Shown here piece after piece: positions 5,501 through 25,318 of a stretch of DNA of 64,000 bases. The notes beneath the pieces are model-generated. The model was not told where the DNA came from. It did not search any database and saw nothing but the letters and a program-made list of their open reading frames with translations. The stretch is from the IMG/VR virus record IMGVR_UViG_3300033143_001962, positions 185,798-249,797 of that record, one strand, 5' to 3'. A program made the translations under genes and the position numbers. The number at the start of each line of letters is the position of its first letter. Position 1 is the first letter of the stretch.

Positions 5501-6360
5501 TCATTCTTCCATAAGTCAACTTGTAAACGTGCGCTATATCTAAAACCGTACAACATTGCTAACTTAGCCACCTCAGGAGCATTAACATCATACAATTCAG
5601 GATCACCACCACATGGCATTAAGTACACCTCACCGTGGAACCCCGCGTCTCTGTACTTTTCAACAAAGAAATTAACATCACGCATATCTGTTTGCTTGCT
5701 TACAACGAACTTTAAGTACACACTACCATACCTTTGATAGCTTGCTACAATTTCAGGTTGTAGTGCATCCTCCATTGCTTCACCAGAACTGCTAATCTTA
5801 GGACTAACACTAAATGTAAGCTGGTGAGATTCAGAATTTTTAATCTGATCTCTTAGTAAGTAATCTGCAAAGTCGTCTGTAATCTTTTGTGTGCCGTTTG
5901 TTTCAAATGTAACTTGTTTGTAGCCCATGTCACGTGCTGTACTTAGTAACTCAGGATAAGCTCGTTGCCACCCTAGTAGTGGCTCACCACCAGTTATAAC
6001 TAAGTGTGTGCTACCGTTGTTTTCTGCTACCGGGTTATTTTCTAAACGGACAACTTCCATTTGTCTAATAATCTCGTCAACTTCTAACATTGGACTTAAA
6101 TTCTTAAAACCTTTATGCCAACTTGCATAACTGTCACATCCGTACTTAGCAAGCGGCAGGCTATTATAACCCCAACCTGGATTATTTTTGTATTCTTTTG
6201 CAAACTGTTCCGGCTCTGTCGTTTCTTCGCCATCTTCTAATCCAAATGATCTACACTCAAAGTTGCAACCGAATGTTCTCACGAATACCGACGGAACGCC
6301 TGTGTATAATCCTTCGCCTTGTAAGCTGTGGAATATTTCTGCTATTTTAATTTTTGCCAT
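5488..6360 (-). CDS. queE: 7-carboxy-7-deazaguanine synthase (radical SAM)
   Basis: EIFHSLQGEG...FVRTFGCNFEC...CDS, VITGGEPLL, FETNGT, SVSPK, LQVDLW. Confidence 0.9.
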   Translation of the reverse strand: MAKIKIAEIFHSLQGEGLYTGVPSVFVRTFGCNFECRSFGLEDGEETTEPEQFAKEYKNNPGWGYNSLPLAKYGCDSYASWHKGFKNLSPMLEVDEIIRQMEVVRLENNPVAENNGSTHLVITGGEPLLGWQRAYPELLSTARDMGYKQVTFETNGTQKITDDFADYLLRDQIKNSESHQLTFSVSPKISSSGEAMEDALQPEIVASYQRYGSVYLKFVVSKQTDMRDVNFFVEKYRDAGFHGEVYLMPCGGDPELYDVNAPEVAKLAMLYGFRYSARLQVDLWKNEWGT

Positions 6361-6762: not shown

Positions 6763-6908
6763 TATAACACCTTAGGTTCGTCATACCAAATACATTCTTC
6801 GTCGTGTCCGTCGACAAAGATGTGATCGATTGCTATTGCACCGCAACATCCGCAGTGCCCGACATTGTCTGCTAACTTAGCCCACATTTGTATTTGTTCT
6901 TGGTCCAT
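6762..6908 (-). CDS. small Cys/His-rich protein (48 aa)
   Basis: Manual: MDQEQIQMWAKLADNVGHCGCCGAIAIDHIFVDGHDEECIWYDEPKVL; TAATG overlaps on both sides. Confidence 0.55.
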   Translation of the reverse strand: MDQEQIQMWAKLADNVGHCGCCGAIAIDHIFVDGHDEECIWYDEPKVL

Positions 6909-7411
6909 TACTTTGGTTTACTCATCCACCAATCTTCAAATGGGAATACAACCCAAACATCGTTTTCTGCTTTGTTAATTTCTAATCCGGTGTATCCAAC
7001 TTCATTGAAGTCACTACTTTGATTATCCACTACTGTTGCAAAGCGTACATTGTTACCGAATACATTTTGGAATTCATCGTGAATGCTTATTTGCCAATCT
7101 TCTTTAATCCAATTAAGCGTTGCACCTGAGTCGTTGATGTCATCTACAATAAGAATGTTCTTACCATTGAACGCATCTTCTGCCATCCAGCAATTACTTT
7201 CCGGGCCTTCTTTGTTTGCATTGTCACGTAAACTTACATCTAAACTGTACATAGGTACATTCATGTATTGGCTGATTAGTACTGCTGGGAGCAATCCACC
7301 GCGTGTAATGCCCACAATGTAATCTGGTTTGTAGCCGTCTAAGTTAATGTCCCGAATAATGGTTTGCACCATACGTTCCATGTCTGTGTAGTCTAAATAT
7401 AGTTTGTTCAT
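6908..7411 (-). CDS. purine phosphoribosyltransferase (Gpt/Hpt-like)
   Basis: IVGITRGGLLPA, PRPP-binding ILIVDDINDSGAT, WVVFPFE. Confidence 0.88.
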   Translation of the reverse strand: MNKLYLDYTDMERMVQTIIRDINLDGYKPDYIVGITRGGLLPAVLISQYMNVPMYSLDVSLRDNANKEGPESNCWMAEDAFNGKNILIVDDINDSGATLNWIKEDWQISIHDEFQNVFGNNVRFATVVDNQSSDFNEVGYTGLEINKAENDVWVVFPFEDWWMSKPK

Positions 7412-9458: not shown

Positions 9459-10046
9459 TTAGTATTCTACCTTGCAGTGACTCTTAGGTGTTTCCCAGAA
9501 CTCAACAGCTACAACATCAACACCAAGTCCTAGCATTTTCTTCTGAGCTAATGTAAGTAACCAAGCCGCTAAGTTTTCACTTGTTGGAATAAAGTCTACA
9601 AACACCATACCTTCGTACTTTTCGATTACTGGTACTATGTTAGGCACGTACTCTAGATTTGGCGTATAATACCCTTCAGCATGTTCTATGCACTTATCAA
9701 AGTCTAAGATCTTTTTAGGCGCTGAATGTGTACCCGATGTATGATCAAACCCAATCAGTTCAGGCACTTCGTGTGGTAATAGTGGATCGTTAATATCCAT
9801 TATGAACTTATGATCAAGTACATCATCAATGAAGTCTTTCATCCAACCTAAGTGTTTAAAATCTGTAACCATACCACGTGTTAGTTCATCACCTTCAAGC
9901 ATAACTTTAAGCTTACCTTGATGCCCATGCAAATGTCTACATGCTAAACATGTATCACCTTCCGCTGTAAATTCTGCATTTAATTCTTGCGACCAAACCC
10001 TGTGCCCGTAGCACCAGTCAAAACTTTTATCTATCGTCCACTTCAT
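9459..10046 (-). CDS. queD: 6-carboxy-5,6,7,8-tetrahydropterin synthase
   Basis: FDWCYGHRV...CRHLHGH...DFKHL...LDHKF...PTSENLA...FWETPKS. Confidence 0.92.
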   Translation of the reverse strand: MKWTIDKSFDWCYGHRVWSQELNAEFTAEGDTCLACRHLHGHQGKLKVMLEGDELTRGMVTDFKHLGWMKDFIDDVLDHKFIMDINDPLLPHEVPELIGFDHTSGTHSAPKKILDFDKCIEHAEGYYTPNLEYVPNIVPVIEKYEGMVFVDFIPTSENLAAWLLTLAQKKMLGLGVDVVAVEFWETPKSHCKVEY

Positions 10047-10436: not shown

Positions 10437-10841
10437 TTACTTGTACTTCAACGCAATCATAATGGCATCGTCGTCGTTATTGGTACCAATGTACACACGA
10501 TCACCACCACAGATTTCATTGAATTCAAATATGCTAGTTTCGTCGTATAACCCGCGTCCTGATTTAATTGTTGTGTGGTCTCCTAGCTCCCTTGCTGGGT
10601 AACAGTACGTATCCCTAAATGTTTTGTCGACATACCATCCCATCATCGGGCAATCGCCAAACACTTTATGCCAGTCTACCTCAATAATGTGCTTGTAGTT
10701 ATAGAAGACTGTTTTTATATTAGGCGCATGTAGCCACAAGTTTTCAGCATTCCACTTATCTATCTCACGCTCGTGATAAGTTCGTCCTGTCTTCCAGGTT
10801 AGGTACTTGTCTTTAAGATTTTCAAGAATTTTACTTGTCAC
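10437..10841 (-). CDS. hypothetical, family C-like C-terminus
   Basis: ends NDDDAIMIALKYK. Confidence 0.55.
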   Translation of the reverse strand: MTSKILENLKDKYLTWKTGRTYHEREIDKWNAENLWLHAPNIKTVFYNYKHIIEVDWHKVFGDCPMMGWYVDKTFRDTYCYPARELGDHTTIKSGRGLYDETSIFEFNEICGGDRVYIGTNNDDDAIMIALKYK

Positions 10842-11637
10842 GGTACTTAGTGTTAAGTTCGCGAGCCTTTTCTAAAAGGTGTAATGGAGATCCCATTTCG
10901 TTAGCCCATGCTGTAAATTCTTTTGTATCCTTAGGGAAACAATGTCCACCAAAGCCGTACTGTCCATCTGGACCTGGTACTTGTGTATGTGACATTCCGA
11001 TGCGCTTGTCAAGTGCAAGTGCTTCTATCATTGCGTCCCAGTTAGTGTCGTATGTTTCTTTGTACAGTGCTTCTAGTTCATTAAAGAACATAACCTTCAT
11101 TGCTAAGAACGAGTTTTCTGCGTACTTTAAAAAGCCTGCGCTTGCAATATCTAAAAAGCGTACATCCTTAATAGTCATTAATTGGCTAAGCACTTCATGC
11201 CACCAACGTCCACCTTTGCCTCCAAATATAGCAAACTCTGAATCACGGAACTCTTGTGTCGGGTCAGTACCTACACTACCTCTAAGGAATTCAGGACTGA
11301 ATGTTACTTTATCTCTGACACCGAGAATGTCTAGTGTATCAACACTAGTAGTCGACTTAATAAGAATTTGTGCATTAGGGTAATGCTGTTGAATCTCAAG
11401 AGTGTACTCAGTTACTAAGCTATCATCAACACGACCATTGTCTGATTCAGGAGTAGGAACACAAATAACAAAACCGTCTACATCAGTGTATCTGTTATGT
11501 AACGCACCTAAATTCGCAAAGTAATTAGTCATTGGTTGGAAGTTATAAGGGTCAACAATGTACACATCATGCTTGTCACTTAAAACACTGTAAATGGCTT
11601 TGCCAACAAAGCCTAATCCTACTACGCAAAATTTCAA
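10831..11637 (-). CDS. ugd: UDP-glucose/GDP-mannose 6-dehydrogenase (lacks C-terminal domain)
   Basis: VVGLGFVG, ICVPTP, IKSTT, FSPEFLR, KYAENSFLAMKVMFFNE, GFGGHCFPKD. Confidence 0.88.
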   Translation of the reverse strand: MKFCVVGLGFVGKAIYSVLSDKHDVYIVDPYNFQPMTNYFANLGALHNRYTDVDGFVICVPTPESDNGRVDDSLVTEYTLEIQQHYPNAQILIKSTTSVDTLDILGVRDKVTFSPEFLRGSVGTDPTQEFRDSEFAIFGGKGGRWWHEVLSQLMTIKDVRFLDIASAGFLKYAENSFLAMKVMFFNELEALYKETYDTNWDAMIEALALDKRIGMSHTQVPGPDGQYGFGGHCFPKDTKEFTAWANEMGSPLHLLEKARELNTKYRDK

Positions 11638-13423: not shown

Positions 13424-13497
13424 TGGTGCTCGGTGCGGGATTCGAACCCGCGTCTTAAGATTTAGAATCCCGCGCTAAGCCACTCAGCTAACCGAAC
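13424..13497 (-). tRNA. tRNA with CUA anticodon (amber suppressor type), CCA encoded
   Basis: GTTCGGT/ACCGAGC acceptor stem, GCTG/TAGC D-stem, loop TT-CTA-AA, T-arm GCGGG-TTCGAAT-CCCGC, 3' ACCA; anticodon stem weak (C-A mismatch, two G-U). Confidence 0.85.
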
Positions 13498-15658: not shown

Positions 15659-16339
15659 TTAACACTTGTTGTTATGGAATATAGACATAAACTCTTGTCT
15701 AGTACTAGGATCAGATTTAAATACGCCACCAAGCTTGCTTGTAATTGTGCTACTACCTACATCTTCAACACCGCGTGACTTAACACAAAAATGTTGTGCA
15801 TCCATAATAACTGCAACATCTTCTGTGTCTAATATAAATTGTAATGCGTTAAACACTTGCTCTGTTAAGCGTTCTTGTATTTGTGGACGTTTTGCAAAGT
15901 ACTCTACAATACGATTAATTTTACTCAACCCTAGTACAGTTTTCTTTGGAATGTAACCCACTGTAGCGAAGCCATCAATGACAACAAAGTGATGTTCGCA
16001 ATTTGATTGTACGTTTATGTTACGTTCAACAACCATTGCATCGTACTTCATCTTGTTTTCGACTGTTGTACACTTTGGAAATGCGGCTGGATCTAAGCCC
16101 CAAAACACTTCACCTACGTACATTTTCGCTACACGTTTAGGAGTATCAATGAGACTATCATCAGTCATGTCTAATCCTAACGTTTCCATAATATCCTTGA
16201 ACTTTGTTTCAATTATGTCAATTTTTGCTGATCTACTAAGTCCATTGTCGACCATTGGAGTTTGTACACCTTTTTCTTTAAGGTAGTCGTTTACCTCTTT
16301 ACCTAAATCTGAATCTGTTTTTACCTTGTTAAAACTCAT
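15659..16339 (-). CDS. folE: GTP cyclohydrolase I
   Basis: DTPKRVAKMY, SNCEHH, GLSKINRIV, RPQIQERLT, HFCVKSRGV. Confidence 0.95.
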   Translation of the reverse strand: MSFNKVKTDSDLGKEVNDYLKEKGVQTPMVDNGLSRSAKIDIIETKFKDIMETLGLDMTDDSLIDTPKRVAKMYVGEVFWGLDPAAFPKCTTVENKMKYDAMVVERNINVQSNCEHHFVVIDGFATVGYIPKKTVLGLSKINRIVEYFAKRPQIQERLTEQVFNALQFILDTEDVAVIMDAQHFCVKSRGVEDVGSSTITSKLGGVFKSDPSTRQEFMSIFHNNKC

Positions 16340-17012
16340 TTGTCTTCCTTTTCATGTGTTGTGTATAATTACCTATATCCCACTCTCTAGTGCAACATAA
16401 GCAACAAGCATTTCTGCCATTGAATCTTTTTCCATTGTGATTTATTATAGCAGCCTTTGCCATGCGTTGTCTAGTCTTTTGACTCTTAGGTTTATCTTTA
16501 TGCGTTGCTGCAATCAGGTCTTTTGTCTTATTAGTGTGCTTATGCCCTTCTGCGAACTTGTTACCTGTTACCGCTATAGATTGCGCAAGTCGTCCTGCAT
16601 CTGTTTCTTTAGTTTTGCCAAGTTGTCTTTCACGTTGATCTTGTGCAAGTTTTGCTTTTCGCTCAGGTGATCGTGTTGCTATAGTTTTTCTGCGCTTACT
16701 ATTAACGACTTCACCAAGGTCCCCACCACATCCGCCGTTAGCTACATTGTATCCATTCTGTGTGACATGTGACTCGTATAACTCTATAACAGGTTGTTCA
16801 AGGATTGAGATGTACTCTTTAGTTGGCCCTATACATAATGTTTCAATGATGAAATTTTCTACTCCGTACTTAGCAAACGCATATTGTACAGGATATTTAG
16901 GATTTTTAGCAGTACTTAAATGAATAGCCAGACGTTCTTCTACCTCTAGCTTAGTGAATCCGATATACGTTTTTCTGTTTATCAGATTTGTGATTTTGTA
17001 TAATTTATACAT
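16329..17012 (-). CDS. free-standing GIY-YIG homing endonuclease with NUMOD3-like repeats
   Basis: LYKITNLINRKTYIG, GYN...GG, HKHTNKTKDLI / KSQKTRQRMAKA. Confidence 0.88.
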   Translation of the reverse strand: MYKLYKITNLINRKTYIGFTKLEVEERLAIHLSTAKNPKYPVQYAFAKYGVENFIIETLCIGPTKEYISILEQPVIELYESHVTQNGYNVANGGCGGDLGEVVNSKRRKTIATRSPERKAKLAQDQRERQLGKTKETDAGRLAQSIAVTGNKFAEGHKHTNKTKDLIAATHKDKPKSQKTRQRMAKAAIINHNGKRFNGRNACCLCCTREWDIGNYTQHMKRKTNEF

Positions 17013-17089: not shown

Positions 17090-17716
17090 CTATTTATCCT
17101 TATTTATCGTTATTTCTCGCAGGTCTGGATATTCTTTGTACCCAGGACTACTTATTGTATTGATCTCATTGTTAGCTAATTTGTTCAAGCCGATTACTGC
17201 ATCTTCTGGACGCATCATATAGTGATAACCAATATCAAATTCTTTTTGATCTTTCCAGTGCTTAATGTCTGGATCACGCCCATCGTAAGATGCACGTTTA
17301 AGCCATTTGTATACTTCTCTGTTGTCTGTTAGTATTGCGCCACCATGTCCAATCTCAAGTGGCTTACCATGACCAAATGATAAGCATTGTACAGTCCTAG
17401 GTACGAACATATCTTTTTCAAATGTTCTAGCAAAATCCCAAATACCTGTACCACCTATGTTGTAGCCCTTATCCCACTTTTCTTCAGTGAACATATAACT
17501 AACGTCTAACTTTTCAAGTGTCATTAATACACTCAAGTAAGTGTTAGCAGGAATAGATGCGTACATTGGCGGACGCTTTCTACGTATGCCTAACTCAATT
17601 GCATGTGTGCAAGAGTCTGTTAACACGACACCAGGAGCACCTGTGTACTCGCTTATTGCTTTTTCAAATTCTTCAATTGCGTCAAATGGGTCTGTGTAGT
17701 CACTAATGTTTTTCAT
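17090..17716 (-). CDS. DegT/DnrJ/EryC1/StrS-like PLP aminotransferase (short form)
   Basis: EFEKAISEYTG, DSCTHAI, CLSFGHGKPLEIGHGGAILTD, GYHYMM. Confidence 0.75.
   Translation of the reverse strand: MKNISDYTDPFDAIEEFEKAISEYTGAPGVVLTDSCTHAIELGIRRKRPPMYASIPANTYLSVLMTLEKLDVSYMFTEEKWDKGYNIGGTGIWDFARTFEKDMFVPRTVQCLSFGHGKPLEIGHGGAILTDNREVYKWLKRASYDGRDPDIKHWKDQKEFDIGYHYMMRPEDAVIGLNKLANNEINTISSPGYKEYPDLREITINKDK
17091..17096 (-). promoter_or_regulatory. T4-like late promoter core (TAAATA)
   Basis: ATAAATA about 80 nt upstream of the endonuclease-folE unit. Confidence 0.5.
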
Positions 17717-18483
17717 AAGTATGCCTTTAGTTTTTCTGCGACAATCCGATTTGATTGTGGGCCAAGATGCCCAGCTGAATCGGATTGGTCCACAGACATT
17801 GTTTTAAAATCTGATTGTGTAAAATCCATATAAAAATCTTTATCAACTTGTGATATTAGCATCATAATATGATCGAGCCGTTGCTGTAACACATCATCTG
17901 GATATGCTGCTCCGTCAAACACTGCTTCCATTGCATCATTTAGTAAATGGTTACTCAACGGTACGTCCATTTGCACTATCTTATTAAGATAATTCGAAAA
18001 ACCGCTAACAAAAACGTACGGTATGTCTTTTTGTTTTAGCATACCCTGTAATGCTATAACATAGCTCAACCAATTGCAAATTTCAATGTACGTGTTCATA
18101 AAATGCTTCAAGTAGATTTTCCTAAAAGCACGAAAATCTTTATTCAATAACTTTGTACCTGTTGGTACAATACAGATCATATCTTCTCTGTCCGAATTCA
18201 ATGACCGGTGCATTGATAATCTACTCACCCCCGACCATTGAACTATAACACGATCATAGTCATTGATCGATAATGCTTGTACAGTCCTGCAGAAAATTTC
18301 GTGGTTAGACGAGCCGTCCCTTGCTCTATTATCTATTTTAACATTAAGATCCTGTTCTAATAGATTACTGTACAGGTACTTATTAATATCTTCGTCGGTT
18401 AGATACCCTGATGACTTCGAATGTGAGCATCCTACTAGTAAAATGTTTTCAATGTTTGTTGTAGTAGTCATTAAATGATTCAA
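17713..18483 (-). CDS. SGNH-hydrolase-like protein
   Basis: VGCSHS, GSSNHEI, IVQWS, HLGPQSN. Confidence 0.6.
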   Translation of the reverse strand: MNHLMTTTTNIENILLVGCSHSKSSGYLTDEDINKYLYSNLLEQDLNVKIDNRARDGSSNHEIFCRTVQALSINDYDRVIVQWSGVSRLSMHRSLNSDREDMICIVPTGTKLLNKDFRAFRKIYLKHFMNTYIEICNWLSYVIALQGMLKQKDIPYVFVSGFSNYLNKIVQMDVPLSNHLLNDAMEAVFDGAAYPDDVLQQRLDHIMMLISQVDKDFYMDFTQSDFKTMSVDQSDSAGHLGPQSNRIVAEKLKAYL

Positions 18484-19447
18484 TTATAGTTTTCATATCG
18501 CTAAATTGCGGTTGTGTGCTATTATAGTATAAACTAGCGTCTGCCACAAGTGAATCTGGGTCACCTTCACGTCTGGATTTTACCAAAACGTCTACTTTTC
18601 CGACAATATCTTCAAAAATATCAATTATTTGCTGATTACTGTACCCATCGTTCGTACCCAAATTGAATACTGCTGAGGATTGCCCTTCACTTAGGTCAAC
18701 ACATGCTTTTAAGTGTGCTAATGCGAGATCGCAGACATGAATATAATCACGAACGCAAGTGCCGTCAGGCGTATCGTAATCTGAGCCAAACAATTTAAAC
18801 ACGGTGTCGTTTTGATACGCTTCGAAAATGCGCGGTATAATGTGCGTATCATTTGGCTCTGGTCCTAGTTCGTTGTCCCATACATCTGCTCCTGCTGCGT
18901 TAAAATATCTAAAGCAATAACTTCTAAGGTCGTATGCTTTGTCATAATCTTCTAAGATAAGTTCAATCATCATCTTAGTACTACCATAAGGGTTACAAGG
19001 TACCGTTGGATCGGTCTCTTGTATCATAGCCGCGCAATTATCTGCATTGCCGTACACCGCGGCTGAGCTACTGAAAACAACGAATGGTGTATGCTTCAGC
19101 TTTCGCAGCTGATCTAGCATTTGAATTGTTTTAACCACATTGTTATTGTAGTACTCAGACGGGTCTAGTACACTTGGCCCAACTAAACTTGTTCCAGCAC
19201 AATGGACGACACCATCTAATGTACCGTATTTTTTAATATTTTCTTCATCAACGCAAAGCGCATCCCATAAGTCAGGATCGCCGTAATCGTTAGTAATGTA
19301 TTCAACACCTTTAACGATGTTTTGCTCAACGTGTCTGTTGTCGACTGAGATAACGTATGCACCTGCCTTGTGTAGTACTTTACAAGTGTGACTACCTACG
19401 TAGCCCATACCACCTGTTACTACTATTTTTAATCCGTCTAGTCTCAT
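18449..19447 (-). CDS. galE: UDP-glucose 4-epimerase
   Basis: VTGGMGYVGSH, FSSSAAVYG, YGSTK, RYFNAAGAD, DGTCVRDYIHV; start moved to MRLDG. Confidence 0.92.
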   Translation of the reverse strand: MRLDGLKIVVTGGMGYVGSHTCKVLHKAGAYVISVDNRHVEQNIVKGVEYITNDYGDPDLWDALCVDEENIKKYGTLDGVVHCAGTSLVGPSVLDPSEYYNNNVVKTIQMLDQLRKLKHTPFVVFSSSAAVYGNADNCAAMIQETDPTVPCNPYGSTKMMIELILEDYDKAYDLRSYCFRYFNAAGADVWDNELGPEPNDTHIIPRIFEAYQNDTVFKLFGSDYDTPDGTCVRDYIHVCDLALAHLKACVDLSEGQSSAVFNLGTNDGYSNQQIIDIFEDIVGKVDVLVKSRREGDPDSLVADASLYYNSTQPQFSDMKTIIESFNDYYNKH

Positions 19448-19719
19448 TTTGATAATTCCAATAATGTTATTAAGTGATTGTATGTTTCGTGTACTGCGGG
19501 GTTTTTGCTTTCGCACATCATATCAGTAAAACGTATTAAGTGACACATAGAATAAAAACGCTCATCGTCTATTTCAACTTTCATCTCAGTAATTACTTTA
19601 ACTGGATTTTCCATAGTGTCATGTGTCATTTCACGGATAGGCAACGGAACGTGCGTGTGCTTAACGTCCATTACTCTGAGTCCAAGTTTAGCTAATAGTT
19701 TCTGATTGATATTGGGCAT
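19444..19719 (-). CDS. hypothetical, family B motif
   Basis: KNPAVHETYNHLITLLELS. Confidence 0.6.
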   Translation of the reverse strand: MPNINQKLLAKLGLRVMDVKHTHVPLPIREMTHDTMENPVKVITEMKVEIDDERFYSMCHLIRFTDMMCESKNPAVHETYNHLITLLELSK

Positions 19720-20215
19720 CTATTACTCCTGTGCAATTACAAGTATAACATCTAACATCGTTCATGTCAATAGTGTGTTCGCCACCTTCAAAGTCTTCTA
19801 TAGATGGAGGCGGTAGTACATGATATCCTTTGCCGTTGCATTCTGGGCACGTCCTAGGGTTGCGTAATTTCCTACTTTCGGTTATCATTACTTCTAAGCG
19901 TATTTCGGTTGCCTGGATGTCTTCATGCCATGATGTACGCTGGATGAACAGGCCGTTTTCTTCATGCTTGTAAATTTGAATAGGTACTGCGCCACTGAAC
20001 CAATGCCCGTGTAACTTCCAATGCACTACAGGATCGTAGAACTTAACTTCTGTTATCTTCTGGCCAGGTACAAATGCTGCGGACCACTTATCCATTTCGA
20101 TCTTAGCAGGATCACGTAAGTACGTTGCTGTTACATCGTACTTAAAATCTTCAACCATAAACTTGTTACACAGGTAGTTATGCGACTCCTGATTTATTAA
20201 CTCAGTCGGTAACAC
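19688..20215 (-). CDS. hypothetical with DnaJ-type zinc finger
   Basis: CPECNGKG...CYTCNCTG. Confidence 0.55.
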   Translation of the reverse strand: MLPTELINQESHNYLCNKFMVEDFKYDVTATYLRDPAKIEMDKWSAAFVPGQKITEVKFYDPVVHWKLHGHWFSGAVPIQIYKHEENGLFIQRTSWHEDIQATEIRLEVMITESRKLRNPRTCPECNGKGYHVLPPPSIEDFEGGEHTIDMNDVRCYTCNCTGVIDAQYQSETIS

Positions 20216-20571
20216 TAAGGATCGTCCATGACAGGAACTTCATTTGCATTGCGACCATTCACTAATGCCATTGTAGTTAGTAGTCCTTCGAACGCATCTT
20301 TAATTGCCGGGTCATGTGAATTACGTATAGTATCCATTAGCTCTAAGTCTTTAATAAATTTTCCTAAGTTAATGTCCACGCCGTATATACTACCAGCAAA
20401 TGTTATCTCAGTATTCGTTGTTGCTGTATTATCGTACTTTTCAGTAACGCTTGCTACCATTAAATTATAATAAGATAGGTTTACTTTAAATGTGTCTTCA
20501 TTATTCATACTTTCCTGCTTGCACCATGTCTCTATAGCGCATATCATCTCGGTTCCATTCCTCACCACCAC
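20215..20571 (-). CDS. hypothetical, family B motif
   Basis: HDPAIKDAFEGLLTTMALV. Confidence 0.55.
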   Translation of the reverse strand: MVVRNGTEMICAIETWCKQESMNNEDTFKVNLSYYNLMVASVTEKYDNTATTNTEITFAGSIYGVDINLGKFIKDLELMDTIRNSHDPAIKDAFEGLLTTMALVNGRNANEVPVMDDP

Positions 20572-21679
20572 CTTGCATTATGTCAATGCACCGATCAATA
20601 GTACCGTTTGTCCAATCGCTTATCTTGCCTATGTTAGGACTTGGTGCATCTAATAATTTCATAAGTTTAGCTTCCGCATCATCTAAACTCCAAGGTACGT
20701 ATAAGCGATCTGCATCATTAGCAAATGTTTCCGGGAATGAACGGTATGCTGGATATAATACATTACATCCTAATGCGTCTGCTTCACTTACTGTATTACT
20801 AACCCAATCTTGTAATGCACAATTGAACATTATTCGACTATCGTTAACAATATCGTAGTACTGGTTCTTCTTTAAGTCTTCGTGTATAGTAAGTTTACCT
20901 TCTGCTTCTAACTTGCGAGCACGGTTAATAAACTTCTGATTGTTACTACGTAGTGGACCACCTTGCATAATTGCAAACTCCACTGTTGGATCTTTAGCTG
21001 TTACACGTTCAATTAAGTCCATGTAGAAGTCTGGTTGCTTCTCTTGATCCCAACGTGCGCCAAATACTACTCTGCGCTTACGTTCGTTAAAAGGTTTAAT
21101 GTTGTTATCAACTCTACCTTGTACTTCTTCTTTGCCAAATGCTAGTCCACTAATGTTATACAGTGGAGCAGTCCAGTTAGCTATCTTCATGTGTGCAACC
21201 ATTTCTTCATTAGTTGCAAGTACATGACAATTTGGAATTTCGTTAACCATTGCTTCGTACAATGACATCCACTTAGCCATACCCCATACATGAACAAAGT
21301 CATCTGGGTCTACTGCTTGTGCTAAACATCTTACGTATACTTGCGGTTGATCTTCTTTTGGTATCTGATTCATAATGTAAGGTAACGACTCGATACCAGG
21401 GCTAAACATATCTTCAAAAAAGATACAGTCTTCCCCGGTAACGTCACCGTTCCGCATCATTTGAACTAAGTTCATCATCTGCGACATTGAGAAATATGAT
21501 CTGCCATGGGCATCAAGCACTTGTCCCACTTGAATAGACTTAGTGTTGTCGATTTCCGTTCCGGGCACTATCACGTAATCTATGCCACGTTTCTTAAATG
21601 CCGCTTCGCTCCAGTCCTGTAACTGTAAGGTATATCTACCTTCATACGATTCCAAACCCATGTAAATCAATTTTCTCAT
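20501..21679 (-). CDS. GT-B (GT4-like) glycosyltransferase
   Basis: VVFGARWDQEKQPDF...ALQDWVSNTVSEADALGCNVLYP (ExxxxG acceptor motif variant). Confidence 0.75.
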   Translation of the reverse strand: MRKLIYMGLESYEGRYTLQLQDWSEAAFKKRGIDYVIVPGTEIDNTKSIQVGQVLDAHGRSYFSMSQMMNLVQMMRNGDVTGEDCIFFEDMFSPGIESLPYIMNQIPKEDQPQVYVRCLAQAVDPDDFVHVWGMAKWMSLYEAMVNEIPNCHVLATNEEMVAHMKIANWTAPLYNISGLAFGKEEVQGRVDNNIKPFNERKRRVVFGARWDQEKQPDFYMDLIERVTAKDPTVEFAIMQGGPLRSNNQKFINRARKLEAEGKLTIHEDLKKNQYYDIVNDSRIMFNCALQDWVSNTVSEADALGCNVLYPAYRSFPETFANDADRLYVPWSLDDAEAKLMKLLDAPSPNIGKISDWTNGTIDRCIDIMQGGGEEWNRDDMRYRDMVQAGKYE

Positions 21680-21688
21680 TTTCTTTCC

Positions 21689-21922
21689 TTATCGTTTGCC
21701 GGTGTATACTGGCTTGCTATGGAATCGGCGTAAGTCGAAATCCCATTGGTTCTTGCAATTTTTATTATTGCGGAACTTGTTGTACTGCTGGAAGGGATAT
21801 GTACGCATATTGTACATGTCAGCTTCGTTAAATTTATATCCGTGACTCACGCAAAATGCTTTGTACTTTTCTAAGTCATCAAACACTTGTTCCGTGCGCG
21901 GGTTTTTCTTTTTATACTTCAT
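21689..21922 (-). CDS. small basic hypothetical protein
   Basis: ORF track; start moved to MKYKKK. Confidence 0.55.
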   Translation of the reverse strand: MKYKKKNPRTEQVFDDLEKYKAFCVSHGYKFNEADMYNMRTYPFQQYNKFRNNKNCKNQWDFDLRRFHSKPVYTGKR

Positions 21923-21941
21923 TGTTAATTCCTTTATGGGA

Positions 21942-22376
21942 TTATAGTTTAGTGTAATGGATCTCCGATCCATTTTCGTTATCTTCGCTTACGCTTATTG
22001 TGATATCTCTTTCAGGATATCTGTTCGCAATGTAATTATAAAGTTCGTCGGATAGCATCTCGCATGACTTATAATCTAGTTGCAGAATATCTTGGTTGAA
22101 GCCATTAAGGCACCAACGCTTAAATTGTATAAATTCTATTTCTCTATCATTGTGGAATACTTCGATTGCAATTTTAAAATGGAACATGTGCCTATGTGGG
22201 TGGGCAAGGAAACTTACATCGTACTCGTCACCTGTTGCAAGGGCAGGATTAATCTTTGCGTCTGGGTAGTTGTGAACGCCTTCGCGTTGGAATGTTACCC
22301 AAATAAACCGCTGTGCGTTAGTCTTTACTGTATCAACTTTATCTTGCTTTGCTTGTATTCTTTGTTCTGTATCCAT
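21942..22376 (-). CDS. QueD-paralog T-fold protein, DpdL-like (putative CDG decarboxylase)
   Basis: LAHPHRHMF fits LxxxHRHxF; DREIEFIQFK, SCEMLS, ISVSEDNENG; DpdL motif recalled from the literature, not searched. Confidence 0.65.
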   Translation of the reverse strand: MDTEQRIQAKQDKVDTVKTNAQRFIWVTFQREGVHNYPDAKINPALATGDEYDVSFLAHPHRHMFHFKIAIEVFHNDREIEFIQFKRWCLNGFNQDILQLDYKSCEMLSDELYNYIANRYPERDITISVSEDNENGSEIHYTKL

Positions 22377-22411
22377 GTCTTATTATAACACCTTTAGTAA
22401 GTTAATGCTAG

Positions 22412-22639
22412 TTAAACGGTTCCACGTGCTTGTTTTTCAACAATTTCAATTTCAACTCGTTCTCGAATTGAATCCAATGCGTCCATTAAGTCGTCTTCAT
22501 TGCGTGGCTCGTGCTCGTCATTGATAAAATTCAATGTAGCATTAAACCCGTTTTCTTCTAAGAATTCATGTAGTGCTTGTGAAATTGCTGACTTGCCTAC
22601 ACCGGCTGCGCCAGTAACGGTTATTGTAATTTTACTCAT
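22412..22639 (-). CDS. small P-loop-containing protein
   Basis: TGAAGVGKS Walker A in 75 aa. Confidence 0.5.
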   Translation of the reverse strand: MSKITITVTGAAGVGKSAISQALHEFLEENGFNATLNFINDEHEPRNEDDLMDALDSIRERVEIEIVEKQARGTV

Positions 22640-23271
22640 ACTATTTTATCATCCTTGTATTTTTTCCAATTTGTGTACTTGTCTGGATCCATTAAGCTAT
22701 GTAACTTATGACACCATACACCTGGGTTCGATGCATCAAAATCTTTATCATCGATCTTAACTGTAGCGTTATATCCCATTTGGTTAGCATAAGGAATCTT
22801 ACAACTAATCATCGGAATGAAGTTATGCTTTTCGACTAAAATAGTTTCAACAATATCTTCTGCGTACTTAACGTCAAAGTCTAACGTACACCAAAAGTCA
22901 TCTACGTGCATAAGACAACCATTGATCATCTCAACCCATTCTCGCAACTGGTCCGACAGACTTGGCAACGGAGTGTTAATAAGATCAAAACTTTGATTGG
23001 CACCGAAGTAAATAGCCTGACATTGTAATGTGTTAGCTCTTGTAAGTATTTCTCTAAGGGGCTGCACACCTACAACAAATAATGTTTTAAGTTCATGTGC
23101 TGGTGTATGCTCTACTTCATAACCTATGAAGAAGTTAGCATCTGTATTTTCTGTTTCGTTTGTATAATCTCTTTTCATTTTCTTTCCTTGTGAACATTTA
23201 GGGCATGTTGCGCCATGTGGGTATTGTACCTTGTGCGTTGGACACAAATGATATGTATCTGCATTTAACAT
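22636..23271 (-). CDS. uncharacterised protein in the dpdA-dpdL interval
   Basis: FFIGYEVEHTP...IYFGANQSF...TVKIDDKDF...NPGVWCH; optional N-terminal C..H...C..C finger. Confidence 0.65.
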   Translation of the reverse strand: MLNADTYHLCPTHKVQYPHGATCPKCSQGKKMKRDYTNETENTDANFFIGYEVEHTPAHELKTLFVVGVQPLREILTRANTLQCQAIYFGANQSFDLINTPLPSLSDQLREWVEMINGCLMHVDDFWCTLDFDVKYAEDIVETILVEKHNFIPMISCKIPYANQMGYNATVKIDDKDFDASNPGVWCHKLHSLMDPDKYTNWKKYKDDKIV

Positions 23272-23513: not shown

Positions 23514-23754
23514 CTTCTGTACCGCATAGTTCGCAATACGGCGTATAGTCTGTATAATCTGTATCTAAGTATCCGCCTGGGCTGTAGTACTCCCTGGTCT
23601 TAACGTACTGCTGAGGATGGTGACATATACTTTTTAATTCTTCTTTCGCGTCCATGATTTCTTGAGACATTGCATCACGTTCAGCTTCTAATTCTGCAAT
23701 GTTTTTGTTCCAAGCTTTAATATCACGTATGTACATATTACTCTCCAAATTCAA
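23476..23754 (-). CDS. coiled-coil plus zinc-finger hypothetical protein
   Basis: CHHP...YCELCG. Confidence 0.55.
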   Translation of the reverse strand: MNLESNMYIRDIKAWNKNIAELEAERDAMSQEIMDAKEELKSICHHPQQYVKTREYYSPGGYLDTDYTDYTPYCELCGTEGETRTVNHGSYG

Positions 23755-25318
23755 ATAACGATGTTTCTGCTACTGAAGCCTTAACTAACTTTTCTTCTTC
23801 TTTTGCTGTTGCCTTAGCAACATCAAGATCAAACATATCGTCGAACTGTCCAGCTGCACTAATAGCTTTCTTACCGCCCATGCCACGTGCGCCACTGATC
23901 CCCATAAAGAACTTACTGTACACATCTAAAATTGCCATACGTTCTTCGTATGCATCTGTTGAGAACACTGCGTCAATAATATCAGTAATAGTTGTGCCTG
24001 TGTGAAGGTCTACTAACATTTTCGGCATAATACCTGCATCGTACTTGCGGTTAGCTTCTTGTACTGAATTAATATGGTGCCAAACATTGTGCCCCATCAT
24101 TAATGCATAACTGAAACTATCCCAAGATGTTTTACCTTCCTTCTTAATCTTATTAAGGTCGCCCGGTGCGTAAACATCAATGTCACTAATAAGTAGTTGT
24201 TCAGATATAGGACTGTCTTCAAATACATCATGAAACACCTTGCCAGTCTTTGGGTTAATGTCAGTTGTTGCAACTTCTGAGAACTTACGATTGTCTGTTG
24301 CGTACTTCTTATCGTCCATTGTAGGATTCATTCTATAACTCCACTTACCACTTTTGTTTGCTTTAGTAAGTGTTCTGTAATCAGGAGTAACAGTCTCATG
24401 ATATATTTGTCCATTGGCGGTAGCAAGAAACGGGCTGGCGCAATCAAAGGATATTGTAAAATTCTTATTATGTGTGCGTCTTACTGCCCGTTGTAATGCT
24501 GTTAATAACACCGCCCATTCTAGTTTTGATGTGCCTAAGAAATGCATCCAGTCTTGCTTGCCTTCCTCTAATAGACCATCATGAATAAGTGTAACTACTC
24601 GTTTAATAGCTAGGTGGGGATCAGCCATGTTAGCTCCTCCCATTGCCCAACCTTTAAAATACTTTTCGTGCTTAGTCGGATCGCTGTACTCTTTCATTTC
24701 TTCGTACCAACGATCAGCGTCGGCATGGTTACTTCCTTGTAGTACATTAAGGAACTTTGCATCGCCTGTAGCATGTTCCATAAAGTATTCGTGATTGTAC
24801 TTAGTCGCATCTACTGCGTCTTGGTAACTTTTAATATTTGTTTTCTTAACGGACTCTGGATTAGTACAAGTCCATGTAGGTATATCAAGTGTCATACTGT
24901 AATCACTAATGCTGCATAGCCATTTAAGTACTGTGCTTCTGTATTTTTCAGCTTTAGGACATTTAGGGTCAAGCCAGTCTGCTTCCCACACACCTTTTGC
25001 AATTTGGAATCCACCACTATCAGCTAACAGTAATGTATCACTGCTACGCTTACGGATCATATCTTCTTTAGGTACTTCCTTAGTTAAATCTAAGTTAGCG
25101 TGTCCTGCTGAGTACAATCCCCATTTGTACTTAAACAAACCTTCCTTGTTATTAAAGAAGTTCATCATTTCCATATCAGGAATGCCTGTAGGCATACGCT
25201 CTTGCGGAACGTTCTCTGGATCACTTTGCTGCTTACCAATGTAAGTGCTGTAGAAGCTACTAATAGCTGGTAAGAATAATGCGTAATCTTCTTGCTTATC
25301 TGTTAAATTTTTATTCAT
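23738..25318 (-). CDS. dpdA: DpdA/TGT-fold 7-deazaguanine transglycosylase
   Basis: ADSGGFQ, MTLDIP, FLNVLQG, GWAMGG, MHFLG, SFDCASP, GHN; no CxCxxC zinc site of tRNA TGTs. Confidence 0.8.
   Translation of the reverse strand: MNKNLTDKQEDYALFLPAISSFYSTYIGKQQSDPENVPQERMPTGIPDMEMMNFFNNKEGLFKYKWGLYSAGHANLDLTKEVPKEDMIRKRSSDTLLLADSGGFQIAKGVWEADWLDPKCPKAEKYRSTVLKWLCSISDYSMTLDIPTWTCTNPESVKKTNIKSYQDAVDATKYNHEYFMEHATGDAKFLNVLQGSNHADADRWYEEMKEYSDPTKHEKYFKGWAMGGANMADPHLAIKRVVTLIHDGLLEEGKQDWMHFLGTSKLEWAVLLTALQRAVRRTHNKNFTISFDCASPFLATANGQIYHETVTPDYRTLTKANKSGKWSYRMNPTMDDKKYATDNRKFSEVATTDINPKTGKVFHDVFEDSPISEQLLISDIDVYAPGDLNKIKKEGKTSWDSFSYALMMGHNVWHHINSVQEANRKYDAGIMPKMLVDLHTGTTITDIIDAVFSTDAYEERMAILDVYSKFFMGISGARGMGGKKAISAAGQFDDMFDLDVAKATAKEEEKLVKASVAETSLFEFGE

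What the first reader, a model, noticed from the sequence alone, without database searches (positions are those of the whole stretch)
17090..23271. Glycosyltransferase and orphan enzyme co-transcribed with dpdA/dpdL: candidate glycosylated 7-deazaguanine hypermodification
Seen, in transcription order: dpdA, two small ORFs, a 211-aa orphan (22636-23271), a mini P-loop protein, the DpdL-like gene, a small basic ORF, a GT-B glycosyltransferase (20501-21679), then galE, an SGNH protein and a DegT-like aminotransferase, followed by folE; ugd sits beside queD. Sugar-nucleotide genes are therefore interleaved with the deazaguanine genes. Known: T-even phages glucosylate hmC with GT-B enzymes; I know of no sugar-bearing deazaguanine. 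Inference: the GT may add a (possibly amino- or acyl-) sugar to the inserted base, and the orphan may be a missing pathway step. The alternative is glycosylation of virion proteins.
Basis: inference. Interest (0 to 1): 0.75.

Follow-up and report, generated by a model that had tools for sequence, protein, structure and literature searches.

The report
Glycosyltransferase wired into 7-deazaguanine DNA pathway
A virus-only sugar-transferring enzyme sits inside the gene cluster that replaces guanine with 7-deazaguanine in this marine jumbo phage and in at least ten other phage lineages, which makes a sugar-decorated deazaguanine (so far unknown in DNA) a well-founded prediction that is easy to test.

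Summary
The gene layout is largely as described, all on the minus strand: DpdA-like transglycosylase, small ORFs, a 211-aa protein, DpdL (exact LxxxHRHxF signature), a GT-B glycosyltransferase, GalE, a DegT-like protein, FolE. QueD, QueE, a phosphoribosyltransferase and a Ugd-like gene lie downstream. No QueC was found.

Corrections:
- The "orphan" has over 3,200 homologues and probably starts at M32.
- The "SGNH" call is unsupported.
- DegT and Ugd are short forms conserved in relatives.
- Co-transcription is plausible but not shown.

Key result: the GT belongs to a large, virus-specific GT4-like family. Every member with enough flanking sequence lies beside dpdL and deazaguanine genes. This covers PA5oct, ACP17, BUDD/X1, BCSR5, Phosso, BUCT-ZZ01, 77 of 77 untruncated IMG/VR loci and four distant metagenomic lineages.

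The reverse does not hold. phiST, whose DNA is proven plain dDG, and four other DpdL phages lack the GT. On the DpdL tree, GT-positive and GT-negative phages interleave. That is the pattern of an optional decorating step downstream of DpdL.

No pyrimidine hydroxylase route exists; the ThyA is canonical. The sugar adduct remains inference, and I found no report of one in DNA. I consider the functional link strongly supported and the chemistry untested.

The parts
23738..25318 (-). DpdA-like DNA guanine transglycosylase (526 aa), a divergent member of the TGT superfamily
   Evidence: Motifs DSGGFQ (D100), LDIP (D145) and SFDCASP (D292) are invariant in alignment A4. TIGR00449 matches at E 2e-3, below its cut-off. 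hhalign gives 91.9% probability, E 7e-7, against ACP17/BUDD/BCSR5-type DpdA. It is 36% identical to PA5oct EST35_0316. It is present in 77 of 80 GT loci.
22636..23271 (-). The probable true start is M32 at 23178, giving about 180 aa.
   Evidence: More than 3,200 homologues, none with a Pfam domain. M32 and many acidic residues (E52, E54, D131, D133, D174, D175) are invariant. It lies between DpdA and DpdL in 75 of 80 loci. In the phage collection it occurs only in the PA5oct group and ACP17. The AF2 model has pLDDT 78 and no significant PDB match.
22412..22639 (-). 75-aa Walker-A (P-loop) mini protein, specific to this window
   Evidence: Weak AAA and kinase P-loop matches. It has no homologue in 80 related loci.
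21942..22376 (-). DpdL, the QueD-like T-fold protein proposed to be the CDG decarboxylase
   Evidence: LAHPHRHMF equals the signature LxxxHRHxF (PMC10516641). phrog_17812 matches at E 1e-27. Homologues occur in phiST, ACP17, PA5oct and others.
21689..21973 (-). 94-aa basic protein just upstream of the GT
   Evidence: pI 9.8. It is conserved at this position in 37 of 80 loci. It matches no family.
20501..21679 (-). GT-B, GT4-like glycosyltransferase of a virus-specific family linked to dpdL
   Evidence: PF00534 scores above its cut-off. The AF2 model has pLDDT 94 and TM 0.6-0.68 to BshA, MshA, PimA and LmbT. Motifs R209-x4-K214 and D291-x7-E299 are conserved. The family spans 815 clusters at 50% identity.
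19444..20571 (-). Three small ORFs (118, 175 and 91 aa) inserted between the GT and GalE, specific to this window
   Evidence: No family matches. None has a homologue in 80 related loci, where GalE directly follows the GT.
18449..19516 (-). UDP-glucose 4-epimerase (GalE)
   Evidence: TIGR01179 scores 289.7 bits against a cut-off of 262.3. It lies directly downstream of the GT in 76 of 80 loci and in the Tara lineage.
17713..18483 (-).
   Evidence: No Pfam, NCBIfam or PHROG match. No homologue in 80 loci.
17090..17716 (-). Short DegT/DnrJ-like protein (208 aa) that keeps the SFxxxK...GGA PLP-lysine motif
   Evidence: PF01041 matches at E 6e-13 but covers only profile positions 164-236. The same 195-238-aa size is seen in 23 relatives, directly after GalE.
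16329..17012 (-). GIY-YIG homing endonuclease inserted between the DegT-like gene and FolE
   Evidence: PF01541. phrog_314 and phrog_7168, both homing endonuclease families.
15659..16339 (-). GTP cyclohydrolase I (FolE)
   Evidence: PF01227 at E 4e-61. NF006824 scores 318.7 bits against a cut-off of 202.
10831..11637 (-). Short Ugd-like nucleotide-sugar dehydrogenase (268 aa). It lacks the first ~70 residues and the C-terminal domain of the cellular enzymes.
   Evidence: TIGR03026 covers positions 71-297 of 413 and scores below its cut-off. Pfam finds the central domain. The size is 246-271 aa in 26 relatives.
9459..10046 (-). QueD (6-carboxytetrahydropterin synthase family)
   Evidence: PF01242 at E 7e-25. 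TIGR03367 matches at E 2e-13 (50.8 bits), below its 89.25-bit cut-off.
6908..7411 (-). Purine-type phosphoribosyltransferase
   Evidence: PF00156 at E 5e-16. Xanthine and hypoxanthine PRT models are the best matches, all below their cut-offs. It is shared with the Tara lineage, BUCT-ZZ01, PA5oct and phiST, and is not correlated with the GT.
5488..6360 (-). QueE (radical-SAM CDG synthase)
   Evidence: QueE models are the best matches (E 1e-14), though all below their curated cut-offs. It is 44% identical to the annotated BUCT-ZZ01 QueE.

Best explanation
The 392-aa protein is a nucleotide-sugar-dependent GT-B (GT4-like, probably retaining) glycosyltransferase. It belongs to a family that exists almost only in viruses and is dedicated to the DpdL branch of 7-deazaguanine DNA modification.

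Proposed pathway:
1. FolE, QueD and QueE make 7-carboxy-7-deazaguanine from GTP.
2. With no QueC present, DpdL converts it to 7-deazaguanine.
3. The DpdA-like transglycosylase exchanges guanine in phage DNA for this base.
4. The GT then transfers a hexose onto the inserted base in the DNA polymer, giving a glycosylated 7-deazaguanine. The adjacent, co-conserved GalE suggests UDP-galactose or a derivative as donor.
5. In some relatives, sugar-modifying genes (the short DegT-like and Ugd-like proteins) and a second GT may diversify the glycan.

The likely function is a further layer of protection from restriction enzymes and from defences aimed at deazaguanine.

Shown here: the gene identities, the family's fold and donor-binding motifs, and its strict genomic link to dpdL. 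Inferred: that a sugar is transferred, to which atom, and that this happens on DNA after insertion.
For: 1. Context in cultured phages. Every GT homologue in 50,697 phage records sits inside a deazaguanine cluster and every such phage has DpdL. These are BUCT-ZZ01, ACP17, BCSR5, BUDD, X1, the PA5oct group and Phosso. GT identities among them are only 20-24% apart from BUCT-ZZ01.
2. Context in metagenomes. Of 80 IMG/VR loci, 77 have DpdL, 77 have DpdA and 76 have GalE, in the fixed order DpdA-orphan-DpdL-GT-GalE-FolE. The 3 exceptions are cut by contig ends. Four distant family members (30-32% identity) and six MAG contigs also carry dpdL beside the GT.
3. Nested distribution. DpdL phages without the GT exist: phiST, RHph_I1_18, Bakedbeans, D479 and Ahp1. 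phiST DNA is plain dDG (PMC10516641). GT-positive and GT-negative phages interleave on the DpdL tree, with 4 changes, the same as for shuffled labels. So the GT is an optional step downstream of DpdL.
4. Enzyme features. The model has pLDDT 94. The donor-binding motifs R209-x4-K214 and D291-x7-E299 are conserved. So are polar residues of the N-terminal, acceptor-side domain (E10, R15, Y16, Q67, D90, D127, E142) across members only 20% identical, which argues for one common acceptor.
5. Structural neighbours. The nearest structures (BshA 3mbo/5d01, MshA 3c4q, PimA 2gej, 6kih, LmbT 8ixp/8ixq, 7qsg) are the same ones reported for the phage DNA arabinosyl- and glycosyltransferases of that study, some tested experimentally and the rest predicted (PMC13326640, Table 1).
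6. No competing pyrimidine route. The only ThyA homologue is a canonical thymidylate synthase followed by DHFR.
7. PA5oct, which is GT-positive, has restriction-resistant DNA modified at G whose chemistry is undetermined (PMC12191111).
Against: - 7-Deazaguanine offers no hydroxyl. Attachment would have to go to C7/C8, N2 or O6, and no GT4-type enzyme is known to do this on a nucleobase (my own knowledge).
- No chemical data exist for any GT-positive phage.
- In Phosso the GT sits beside DpdL while DpdA lies about 170 kb away. This fits a role in making the base at least as well as a role on DNA.
- The structural neighbours are mostly enzymes with small-molecule acceptors.
- The complex prediction for DpdA with the GT gave no answer.
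- The 80 IMG/VR loci are close relatives and count as one lineage.
- The record is only about 72% complete, so absences (QueC, hydroxylases) are provisional.
Confidence: 0.5

Rival explanations
1. The GT glycosylates the free base or a nucleotide-level precursor (DG or CDG) before insertion. DpdA or the polymerase then puts the already glycosylated base into DNA. The end product in DNA is the same, but the acceptor and the timing differ.
For: The GT is directly beside DpdL in most lineages. In Phosso it is far from DpdA. The nearest structures have small-molecule acceptors: malate, inositol phosphate, ergothioneine and selenophosphate. TGT-family enzymes can insert bulky bases such as queuine (my own knowledge). 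The published attempt to obtain dDG from ACP17 DpdL plus DpdA alone failed, and the authors suggest other enzymes may be needed (PMC10516641).
Against: Known phage DNA glycosylations occur on the polymer (PMC13326640, abstract and section titles). The window-type DpdA is shared with Vibrio phage 2.275.O, which has a QueF/QueC pathway and no GT, so no DpdA type is specific to GT phages. DpdL at 60% identity functions in a GT-less phage, RHph_I1_18.
Confidence: 0.2
2. The GT works in the deazaguanine pathway but leaves no sugar in virion DNA. It might transiently activate the CDG carboxylate as a glycosyl ester, act on a by-product, or serve as a non-catalytic partner.
For: The genomic link is to the pathway, not demonstrably to DNA. 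No acceptor hydroxyl exists on DG.
Against: DpdL phages make dDG without this GT (phiST), so it is not needed for the core chemistry. Donor-binding residues are conserved, which argues for real catalysis. A co-conserved GalE implies sustained sugar consumption.
Confidence: 0.1
3. The GT glycosylates something other than nucleic acid, such as virion proteins or host envelope components. Its position in the cluster reflects a general early-gene or accessory island.
For: The GalE, Ugd-like and DegT-like genes resemble surface-polysaccharide toolkits. The region holds window-specific inserted ORFs and a homing endonuclease, so it is plastic.
Against: The GT co-occurs strictly with dpdL in at least ten lineages infecting unrelated hosts, and it is the GT rather than the sugar-nucleotide genes that is constant. 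No GT homologue occurs in phages lacking dpdL at E<=1e-3. The acceptor-side residues are conserved despite the different hosts. The neighbours are DNA polymerase, a clamp-like protein (so annotated only in the Phosso homologue) and DpdA.
Confidence: 0.07
4. The GT decorates a hydroxylated pyrimidine (5hmC, 5hoC or 5hmU) as in T-even phages, RB69 and DLP3, and merely neighbours the guanine pathway.
For: All established DNA glycosylations are on pyrimidines (PMC13326640). Those enzymes have the same fold neighbours as this GT.
Against: The genome's only ThyA homologue passes the thymidylate synthase equivalog cut-offs and is followed by DHFR. It lies more than 100 kb from the GT. No arabinose-activation genes lie nearby. 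The GT family tracks dpdL, not ThyA homologues. It is not close to T4 AGT or BGT.
Confidence: 0.05

Closest known systems
DpdL/DpdA3 7-deazaguanine (dDG) system of Cellulophaga phage phiST (Cui et al. 2023, PMC10516641)
   Same: It has FolE, QueD, QueE, DpdL with the LxxxHRHxF signature and a divergent DpdA, and lacks QueC. The predicted base is 7-deazaguanine replacing G.
   Different: phiST has no member of the GT family and its DNA is plain dDG. The DpdA here is a different, larger type (526 aa against 259 aa). GalE, the DegT-like and Ugd-like genes and the 180-aa conserved protein are additional.
Phage DNA glycosyltransferases acting on hydroxylated pyrimidines: T4 alpha/beta-GT on 5hmC, and the arabinosyltransferases of RB69 and DLP3 on 5hoC (PMC13326640)
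   Same: They are GT-B enzymes using UDP-sugars. The RB69 and DLP3 enzymes have the same nearest structures (BshA, MshA, PimA, sucrose-phosphate synthase). They are encoded next to the genes that make the acceptor base, often together with sugar-nucleotide genes. They are thought to act on DNA after replication.
   Different: There is no detectable sequence relationship. T4-type enzymes are not among the near structural neighbours. The partner pathway makes a purine analogue without a hydroxyl handle. No ThyA-type hydroxylase is associated.
Glycosylated queuosines of vertebrate tRNA (galQ and manQ; PMC8654956, PMC7384130)
   Same: They are the only known sugar-bearing 7-deazaguanine nucleosides. 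A TGT-family enzyme inserts the base and a glycosyltransferase acts afterwards.
   Different: They occur in RNA, not DNA. The sugar sits on the cyclopentene-diol of queuosine, and the genes that build that side chain (QueC and the later Q-pathway steps) are absent here.
Uncharacterised homologues in cultured phages: PA5oct EST35_0317, ACP17 ASD50404, BUDD USV40851, BCSR5 QRE00063, Phosso XYS97382, BUCT-ZZ01 UTS52032
   Same: They belong to the same family (20-71% identity over the full length) and sit at the same place inside the deazaguanine cluster.
   Different: None has been studied. Only PA5oct DNA is known to be modified at G, and its chemistry is undetermined (PMC12191111).

Membership tests
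GT-B / GT4-like glycosyltransferases (Pfam Glycos_transf_1) | Two Rossmann-like domains (GT-B fold) | tested here: met
   The AF2 model has pLDDT 94 and pTM 0.91. Foldseek gives E 1e-12 and TM 0.60-0.68 to BshA, MshA, PimA and glycogen synthase.
GT-B / GT4-like glycosyltransferases (Pfam Glycos_transf_1) | Profile match above the curated threshold | tested here: met
   PF00534 scores 28.7 bits against a cut-off of 26.4. The family profile hits GlgM, MshA and PglH in the PDB at E 3e-4 to 1e-3.
GT-B / GT4-like glycosyltransferases (Pfam Glycos_transf_1) | Diphosphate-binding R-x4-K and (E/D)-x7-E motifs in the C-terminal domain | tested here: met
   R209 and K214 are invariant, and D291 and E299 are at least 90% conserved, in 43 sequences. 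Mapping these residues to the motifs rests on my knowledge of GT4 enzymes.
GT-B / GT4-like glycosyltransferases (Pfam Glycos_transf_1) | Transfers a sugar from an NDP-sugar; identity of donor and acceptor | not testable with these tools
   The only hint is the co-conserved GalE directly downstream.
T4-type DNA glucosyltransferases (alpha-GT, beta-GT) | Close sequence or structural similarity to T4 AGT or BGT | tested here: not met
   No T4 enzyme is among the 50 best PDB matches. Viral models annotated as DNA alpha-GT reach only TM 0.46-0.54. tblastn finds no T-even phage.
T4-type DNA glucosyltransferases (alpha-GT, beta-GT) | Genome encodes a hydroxymethyl- or hydroxy-pyrimidine synthase that supplies the acceptor | tested here: not met
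   The single ThyA homologue passes the thymidylate synthase equivalog cut-offs (344.4 against 327) and is followed by DHFR. The record is about 72% complete.
DpdL (proposed CDG decarboxylase) | QueD-like protein with LxxxHRHxF in place of CxxxHGH | tested here: met
   LAHPHRHMF lies in the 144-aa protein. The signature is taken from PMC10516641.
DpdL (proposed CDG decarboxylase) | Homology to phiST CGPG_00067 and ACP17 DpdL | tested here: met
   31% identity and E 4e-11 to phiST; 49% identity and E 3e-37 to ACP17. phrog_17812 at E 1e-27.
DpdL (proposed CDG decarboxylase) | Context of FolE, QueD, QueE and DpdA without QueC | tested here: met
   No PF06508 match in the 249,797-bp record. QueD, QueE, FolE and DpdA are present. 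The record is incomplete.
DpdL (proposed CDG decarboxylase) | Decarboxylase activity | not testable with these tools
   It has not been demonstrated in the literature either (PMC10516641).
DpdA (TGT-superfamily DNA transglycosylase) | Conserved catalytic and substrate aspartates in the DSGGFQ, xDExP-like and FDC motifs | tested here: met
   D100, D145 and D292 are invariant in 13 sequences. Equating them with the TGT motifs rests on my knowledge.
DpdA (TGT-superfamily DNA transglycosylase) | Match to the TGT profile above the curated threshold | tested here: not met
   There is no PF01702 hit. TIGR00449 scores 16.9 bits against a cut-off of 47.6. The profile finds no PDB sequence at E<=1.
DpdA (TGT-superfamily DNA transglycosylase) | Homology to phage proteins already assigned as DpdA | tested here: met
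   hhalign gives 91.9% probability, E 7e-7, over 190 columns to the ACP17/BUDD/BCSR5/BUCT group. BUDD's copy is annotated as queuine tRNA-ribosyltransferase. ACP17's dpdA is used in PMC10516641.
Glycosylated queuosine pathway (galQ, manQ) | Presence of the route to queuosine that provides the diol acceptor | tested here: not met
   No QueC was found. No QueF or later queuosine genes are seen in the cluster.

The most novel reading that the evidence does not exclude
Virion DNA of this phage and of cultured relatives such as PA5oct, ACP17, BUDD and Phosso carries a glycosylated 7-deazaguanine. This would be the first sugar-decorated purine analogue in any DNA. It would be attached without a hydroxyl handle, through a C-, N- or O6-glycosidic link made by a dedicated virus-only GT4-like family. 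Given thousands of near-identical genes in ocean metagenomes, it would be widespread in marine viral DNA.
Probability: 0.5. Interest if true: 0.9.

Novelty: new variant of a known kind. Interest (0 to 1): 0.8.

Why it matters
- All established DNA glycosylations sit on pyrimidines that first receive a hydroxyl. A sugar on 7-deazaguanine would extend hypermodification chemistry to the guanine position and would need an unusual glycosidic linkage.
- It would explain the unidentified G modification of the therapeutic jumbo phage PA5oct.
- It may explain why DpdL plus DpdA from ACP17 gave no dDG in E. coli.
- It would predict resistance or sensitivity patterns towards restriction enzymes, the deazaguanine-directed glycosylases (Dag) and END nucleases.
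- The family is abundant in ocean metagenomes, so a sizeable share of marine viral DNA could carry an undescribed base. That has consequences for sequencing bias and enzymatic handling.
- The prediction can be tested at once with phages already in culture.

Tried and rejected
- Complex prediction for DpdA with the GT returned "no answer". It is not evidence either way.
- The 180-aa conserved protein has no significant PDB fold match. Only an unnamed AlphaFold DB cluster matches it. Its profile finds nothing in the PDB. The protein-atlas search found only unnamed viral clusters. A profile search did not find it in BUDD, BCSR5, Phosso, BUCT-ZZ01 or phiST. Only marginal signals appeared for the ORF beside the GT in L115 (E 0.008) and in BCSR5 (E 0.97).
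- The DpdA profiles found no PDB sequence.
- Promoter and terminator scans were at chance level.
- Isoelectric point as a proxy for DNA binding is uninformative. The GT is acidic (pI 4.9), but so are DpdA (5.7) and the DNA polymerase (5.8).
- A search for informative domain fusions in longer family members found only a low-complexity tail.
- The phosphoribosyltransferase as a GT-specific partner was rejected. It occurs in phiST, which lacks the GT, and is absent from ACP17, BUDD, BCSR5 and Phosso, which have it.
- A megablast of the region against phage genomes found nothing.
- The scan of 185,579 species genomes found only six MAG contigs that look viral.
- Alignment A5 was discarded. It mixed in a second GT from BUCT-ZZ01 and a radical-SAM protein.
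- Literature searches found no report of a sugar on deazaguanine in DNA. The library lacks most subscription journals, and the MMBR 2024 review could not be read.

Full report
**Source and setting.** The window is the last 64 kb of a 249,797-bp IMG/VR virus record that CheckV estimates as about 72% complete. GC content is about 39%. In the region of the finding all genes lie on the minus strand. The phage is a relative of the PA5oct, Phosso and Vibrio 2.275.O jumbo phages. Its family-B DNA polymerase is 43% identical to theirs. The order small conserved protein, DNA polymerase, clamp-like protein is shared with all three, and a DpdA follows in PA5oct and Vibrio 2.275.O; in Phosso the DpdA lies elsewhere in the genome.

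**Checking the observation.** In transcription order the region holds:
- A 526-aa DpdA-like protein (23738-25318).
- ORFs of 92 and 82 aa.
- The 211-aa ORF (22636-23271).
- A 75-aa Walker-A protein.
- A 144-aa DpdL (21942-22376).
- A 94-aa basic protein.
- The 392-aa glycosyltransferase (20501-21679).
- Three ORFs of 118, 175 and 91 aa.
- GalE (18449-19516).
- A 256-aa ORF.
- A 208-aa DegT-like protein (17090-17716).
- A GIY-YIG homing endonuclease.
- FolE (15659-16339).

Further downstream lie a Ugd-like gene, QueD, a purine-type phosphoribosyltransferase and QueE.

DpdL carries LAHPHRHMF, which is exactly the LxxxHRHxF signature that Cui et al. use to separate DpdL from QueD.

The DpdA call rests on three invariant Asp-containing motifs: DSGGFQ, LDIP and SFDCASP. 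It also rests on a weak TIGR00449 match and on a profile-profile match to the DpdA type of ACP17, BUDD and BCSR5 (91.9% probability). It does not reach any curated TGT threshold.

No QueC is found in the record.

- The "SGNH" ORF matches nothing and is unique to this genome.
- The DegT-like and Ugd-like proteins are much shorter than the cellular enzymes. They have the same short length in 23 and 26 related phages, so they are conserved short forms rather than debris.
- The "orphan" has more than 3,200 homologues and most likely starts at M32.
- Co-transcription is plausible but not demonstrated. Genes overlap or lie within 86 nt of each other, and no convincing minus-strand terminator is present.

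**The glycosyltransferase.**
- Fold: Pfam Glycos_transf_1 is matched just above threshold. An AlphaFold model built on 43 diverse homologues is confident (pLDDT 94) and is a GT-B fold.
- Structural neighbours: the nearest are GT4-type enzymes, namely BshA, MshA, PimA, glycogen synthase, LmbT and SenB. T4 alpha- and beta-glucosyltransferases are not among the near neighbours.
- Conserved residues: R209-x4-K214 and D291-x7-E299 are conserved. So are several polar residues of the N-terminal domain (E10, R15, Y16, Q67, D90, D127, E142), even between members only 20% identical. I read this as one conserved acceptor for the whole family.
- Comparison with studied phage DNA enzymes: the DNA arabinosyl- and glycosyltransferases of RB69, DLP3 and RL38J1 (some confirmed experimentally, the rest predicted) are reported to have the very same nearest structures: 3mbo, 3c4q, 2gej, 6kih, 8ixp and 7qsg (PMC13326640). 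The small-molecule flavour of the neighbours therefore does not argue against DNA as the acceptor.
- Family size and range: the family has 815 clusters at 50% identity and more than 8,000 clusters at 90% identity, mostly from marine metagenomes. Among 185,579 species genomes only six MAG contigs carry it. All six carry dpdL beside the GT, and they look viral.

**Gene neighbourhood, the decisive evidence.** In the phage collection, tblastn with the GT finds six records from five phages. A pairwise comparison adds the PA5oct group, and annotation plus a profile search adds Phosso. In each case the homologue lies within the deazaguanine cluster:

| Phage | Local gene order |
|---|---|
| ACP17 | QueD-FolE-(180-aa protein)-DpdA-GT-DpdL-QueE |
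| BUDD | FolE-...-GT-DpdA-DpdL-QueE |
| BCSR5 | DpdL-...-GT-DpdA-...-QueE-...-FolE |
| PA5oct | DpdA-GT-DpdL-...-PRT-QueE |
| Phosso | DpdL-GT-...-FolE-...-QueE |
| BUCT-ZZ01 | QueE-PRT-QueD-FolE-GT2-DpdA-DpdL-GT |

All these phages have DpdL.

Among 80 IMG/VR loci carrying close GT homologues, the counts within 10 kb are: DpdL 77, window-type DpdA 77, the 180-aa protein 75, GalE 76 and FolE 63. The order is fixed: DpdA, 180-aa protein, DpdL, sometimes the basic protein, GT, GalE, sometimes DegT, FolE, PRT, QueE. The three loci without DpdL end less than 1.2 kb upstream of the GT. These 80 loci are one lineage and count once.

The independent support comes from the divergent lineages listed above and from distant family representatives at 30-32% identity. 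All four with usable flanks have dpdL within 2 kb.

**The reverse relation.** DpdL occurs without the GT. Whole-record profile searches find no GT in phiST, RHph_I1_18, Bakedbeans, D479 or Ahp1_CNU-2021. phiST DNA is experimentally plain 2'-deoxy-7-deazaguanosine with complete replacement of dG. On a DpdL tree the GT-positive and GT-negative phages interleave. The tree needs four changes, no fewer than for shuffled labels, and PA5oct pairs with GT-less Ahp1 at 98/96 support. The GT is thus nested within DpdL phages and has been gained or lost repeatedly. This is what is expected of an optional step acting on the product of the DpdL pathway, and not of a component DpdL or DpdA needs.

**Sugar supply.** GalE passes the equivalog cut-off. 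It is directly downstream of the GT in 76 of 80 loci and also in the separate Tara lineage. The short DegT-like and Ugd-like genes are variably present, in 24 and 26 of 80 loci. BUCT-ZZ01 has a second GT in the cluster. This suggests a UDP-hexose donor, possibly galactose, with lineage-specific elaboration. The non-marine lineages have no GalE in the cluster.

**Excluding other acceptors.** The genome's only thymidylate-synthase homologue passes the ThyA equivalog cut-offs, is followed by DHFR, and lies more than 100 kb away. The GT is the only Glycos_transf_1 match in the record. A 5hmC-, 5hoC- or 5hmU-type acceptor is therefore unsupported. Glycosylation of virion or host surface components cannot be excluded. 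It does not explain a link to dpdL that holds across phages of Pseudomonas, Acidovorax, Xanthomonas, Burkholderia, Sinorhizobium and marine hosts.

**Mechanism and its weak point.**
- I propose GTP to CDG (FolE, QueD, QueE), then CDG to 7-deazaguanine (DpdL), then insertion by DpdA, then glycosylation by the GT on DNA.
- The last step is inferred by analogy with all known phage DNA glycosylations.
- Its weak point is chemical: 7-deazaguanine has no hydroxyl, so the link would have to be to the electron-rich C7/C8, to N2 or to O6. That is my own reasoning and is untested.
- Glycosylation of the free base before insertion is a serious rival. Supporting it, the GT is more constantly beside DpdL than beside DpdA. 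In Phosso, DpdA is about 170 kb away.
- The 180-aa protein has many invariant acidic residues and may be an extra enzyme. It is found only in four or five GT-positive lineages, and its fold gave no lead.

**Literature.**
- PA5oct DNA resists enzymes with G in their sites and is targeted by defences that sense modified G. Its base has not been identified (PMC12191111).
- A Vibrio phage, VP1, has full dDG substitution (bioRxiv 10.1101/2025.10.29.685425). Whether it has the GT is unknown.
- Searches found no report of a sugar on deazaguanine in DNA.
- In RNA, galactosyl- and mannosyl-queuosine are known.

**Verdict.** The functional coupling of the GT to the DpdL deazaguanine pathway is strongly supported, and I put it near 0.9. 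That the outcome is a glycosylated deazaguanine in virion DNA is the best reading: about 0.5 for glycosylation on DNA, plus 0.2 for glycosylation before insertion. It needs mass spectrometry, which can be done on phages already in culture.

Noticed in passing
window 13424-13497 (-): ARAGORN reports a tRNA gene with anticodon CUA, an amber-reading tRNA that it labels Pyl. It lies inside the modification island. TAG is still used as a normal stop in about 12% of long ORFs of the genome, so wholesale recoding is not evident.
   Followed up: partly
window 16329-17012 (-): A GIY-YIG homing endonuclease is inserted between the DegT-like gene and FolE. Related loci have DegT directly followed by FolE. 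Several other ORFs here (75, 92, 82, 118, 175, 91 and 256 aa) are also unique to this genome, so the island is a hotspot for insertions.
   Followed up: partly
own genome G000:C1:63101-72351 and 90793-91152 (outside the window; loci L005-L012): A tandem array of at least six paralogous radical-SAM genes (open frames of 396-456 aa) lies on the plus strand, and another lies near 90.8 kb. Their function is unknown.
   Followed up: no
L001:6010-7353 (Synechococcus phage BUCT-ZZ01): A second glycosyltransferase (447 aa, Glyco_trans_1_4) sits in the same deazaguanine cluster, two genes upstream of the family GT. This hints at a disaccharide or an alternative sugar.
   Followed up: no
L024:1776-9896 (Tara Oceans contig, GT 75% identical): Upstream of the GT, this lineage has three radical-SAM proteins (two with SPASM domains), a DAO-family FAD oxidoreductase and a cytochrome-b-like membrane protein instead of the window-type DpdA. 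DpdL lies among these genes at 3079-3594, and a homologue of the 180-aa protein lies at 10-582.
   Followed up: no
L019:8408-9232 (Rhizobium phage RHph_I1_18): In this GT-less phage a macro-domain (Appr-1-p processing) gene directly follows DpdL, which is 60% identical to the window's DpdL. It may be a different add-on to the same base.
   Followed up: no
L124:9146-10733 and L114:1111-7858 (metagenomic contigs with distant GT relatives): In L124 the order is DpdL-GT followed by an AAA_28 protein, a SAM methyltransferase and QueD. In L114, DpdA, DpdL, the GT and a radical-SAM gene sit next to a RES-domain toxin gene and a resolvase, which suggests a mobile element rather than a lytic phage.
   Followed up: no
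window 6908-7411 (-): A purine-type phosphoribosyltransferase lies in the cluster and is shared with the Tara lineage, BUCT-ZZ01, PA5oct and phiST. It could recycle the guanine released by DpdA or make a deazaguanine nucleotide. It is not correlated with the GT.
   Followed up: partly
window 10831-11637 and 17090-17716 (-): The Ugd-like and DegT-like proteins lack whole domains of their cellular counterparts, yet they keep this short form in two dozen related phages. Whether they are active is open.
   Followed up: partly
window 2937-3401 (-): A 154-aa protein is conserved downstream of QueE in 26 of 80 loci and in the Tara lineage, Phosso and PA5oct. It matches a PHROG annotated as virion structural protein (phrog_13349, E 2e-13).
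   Followed up: no
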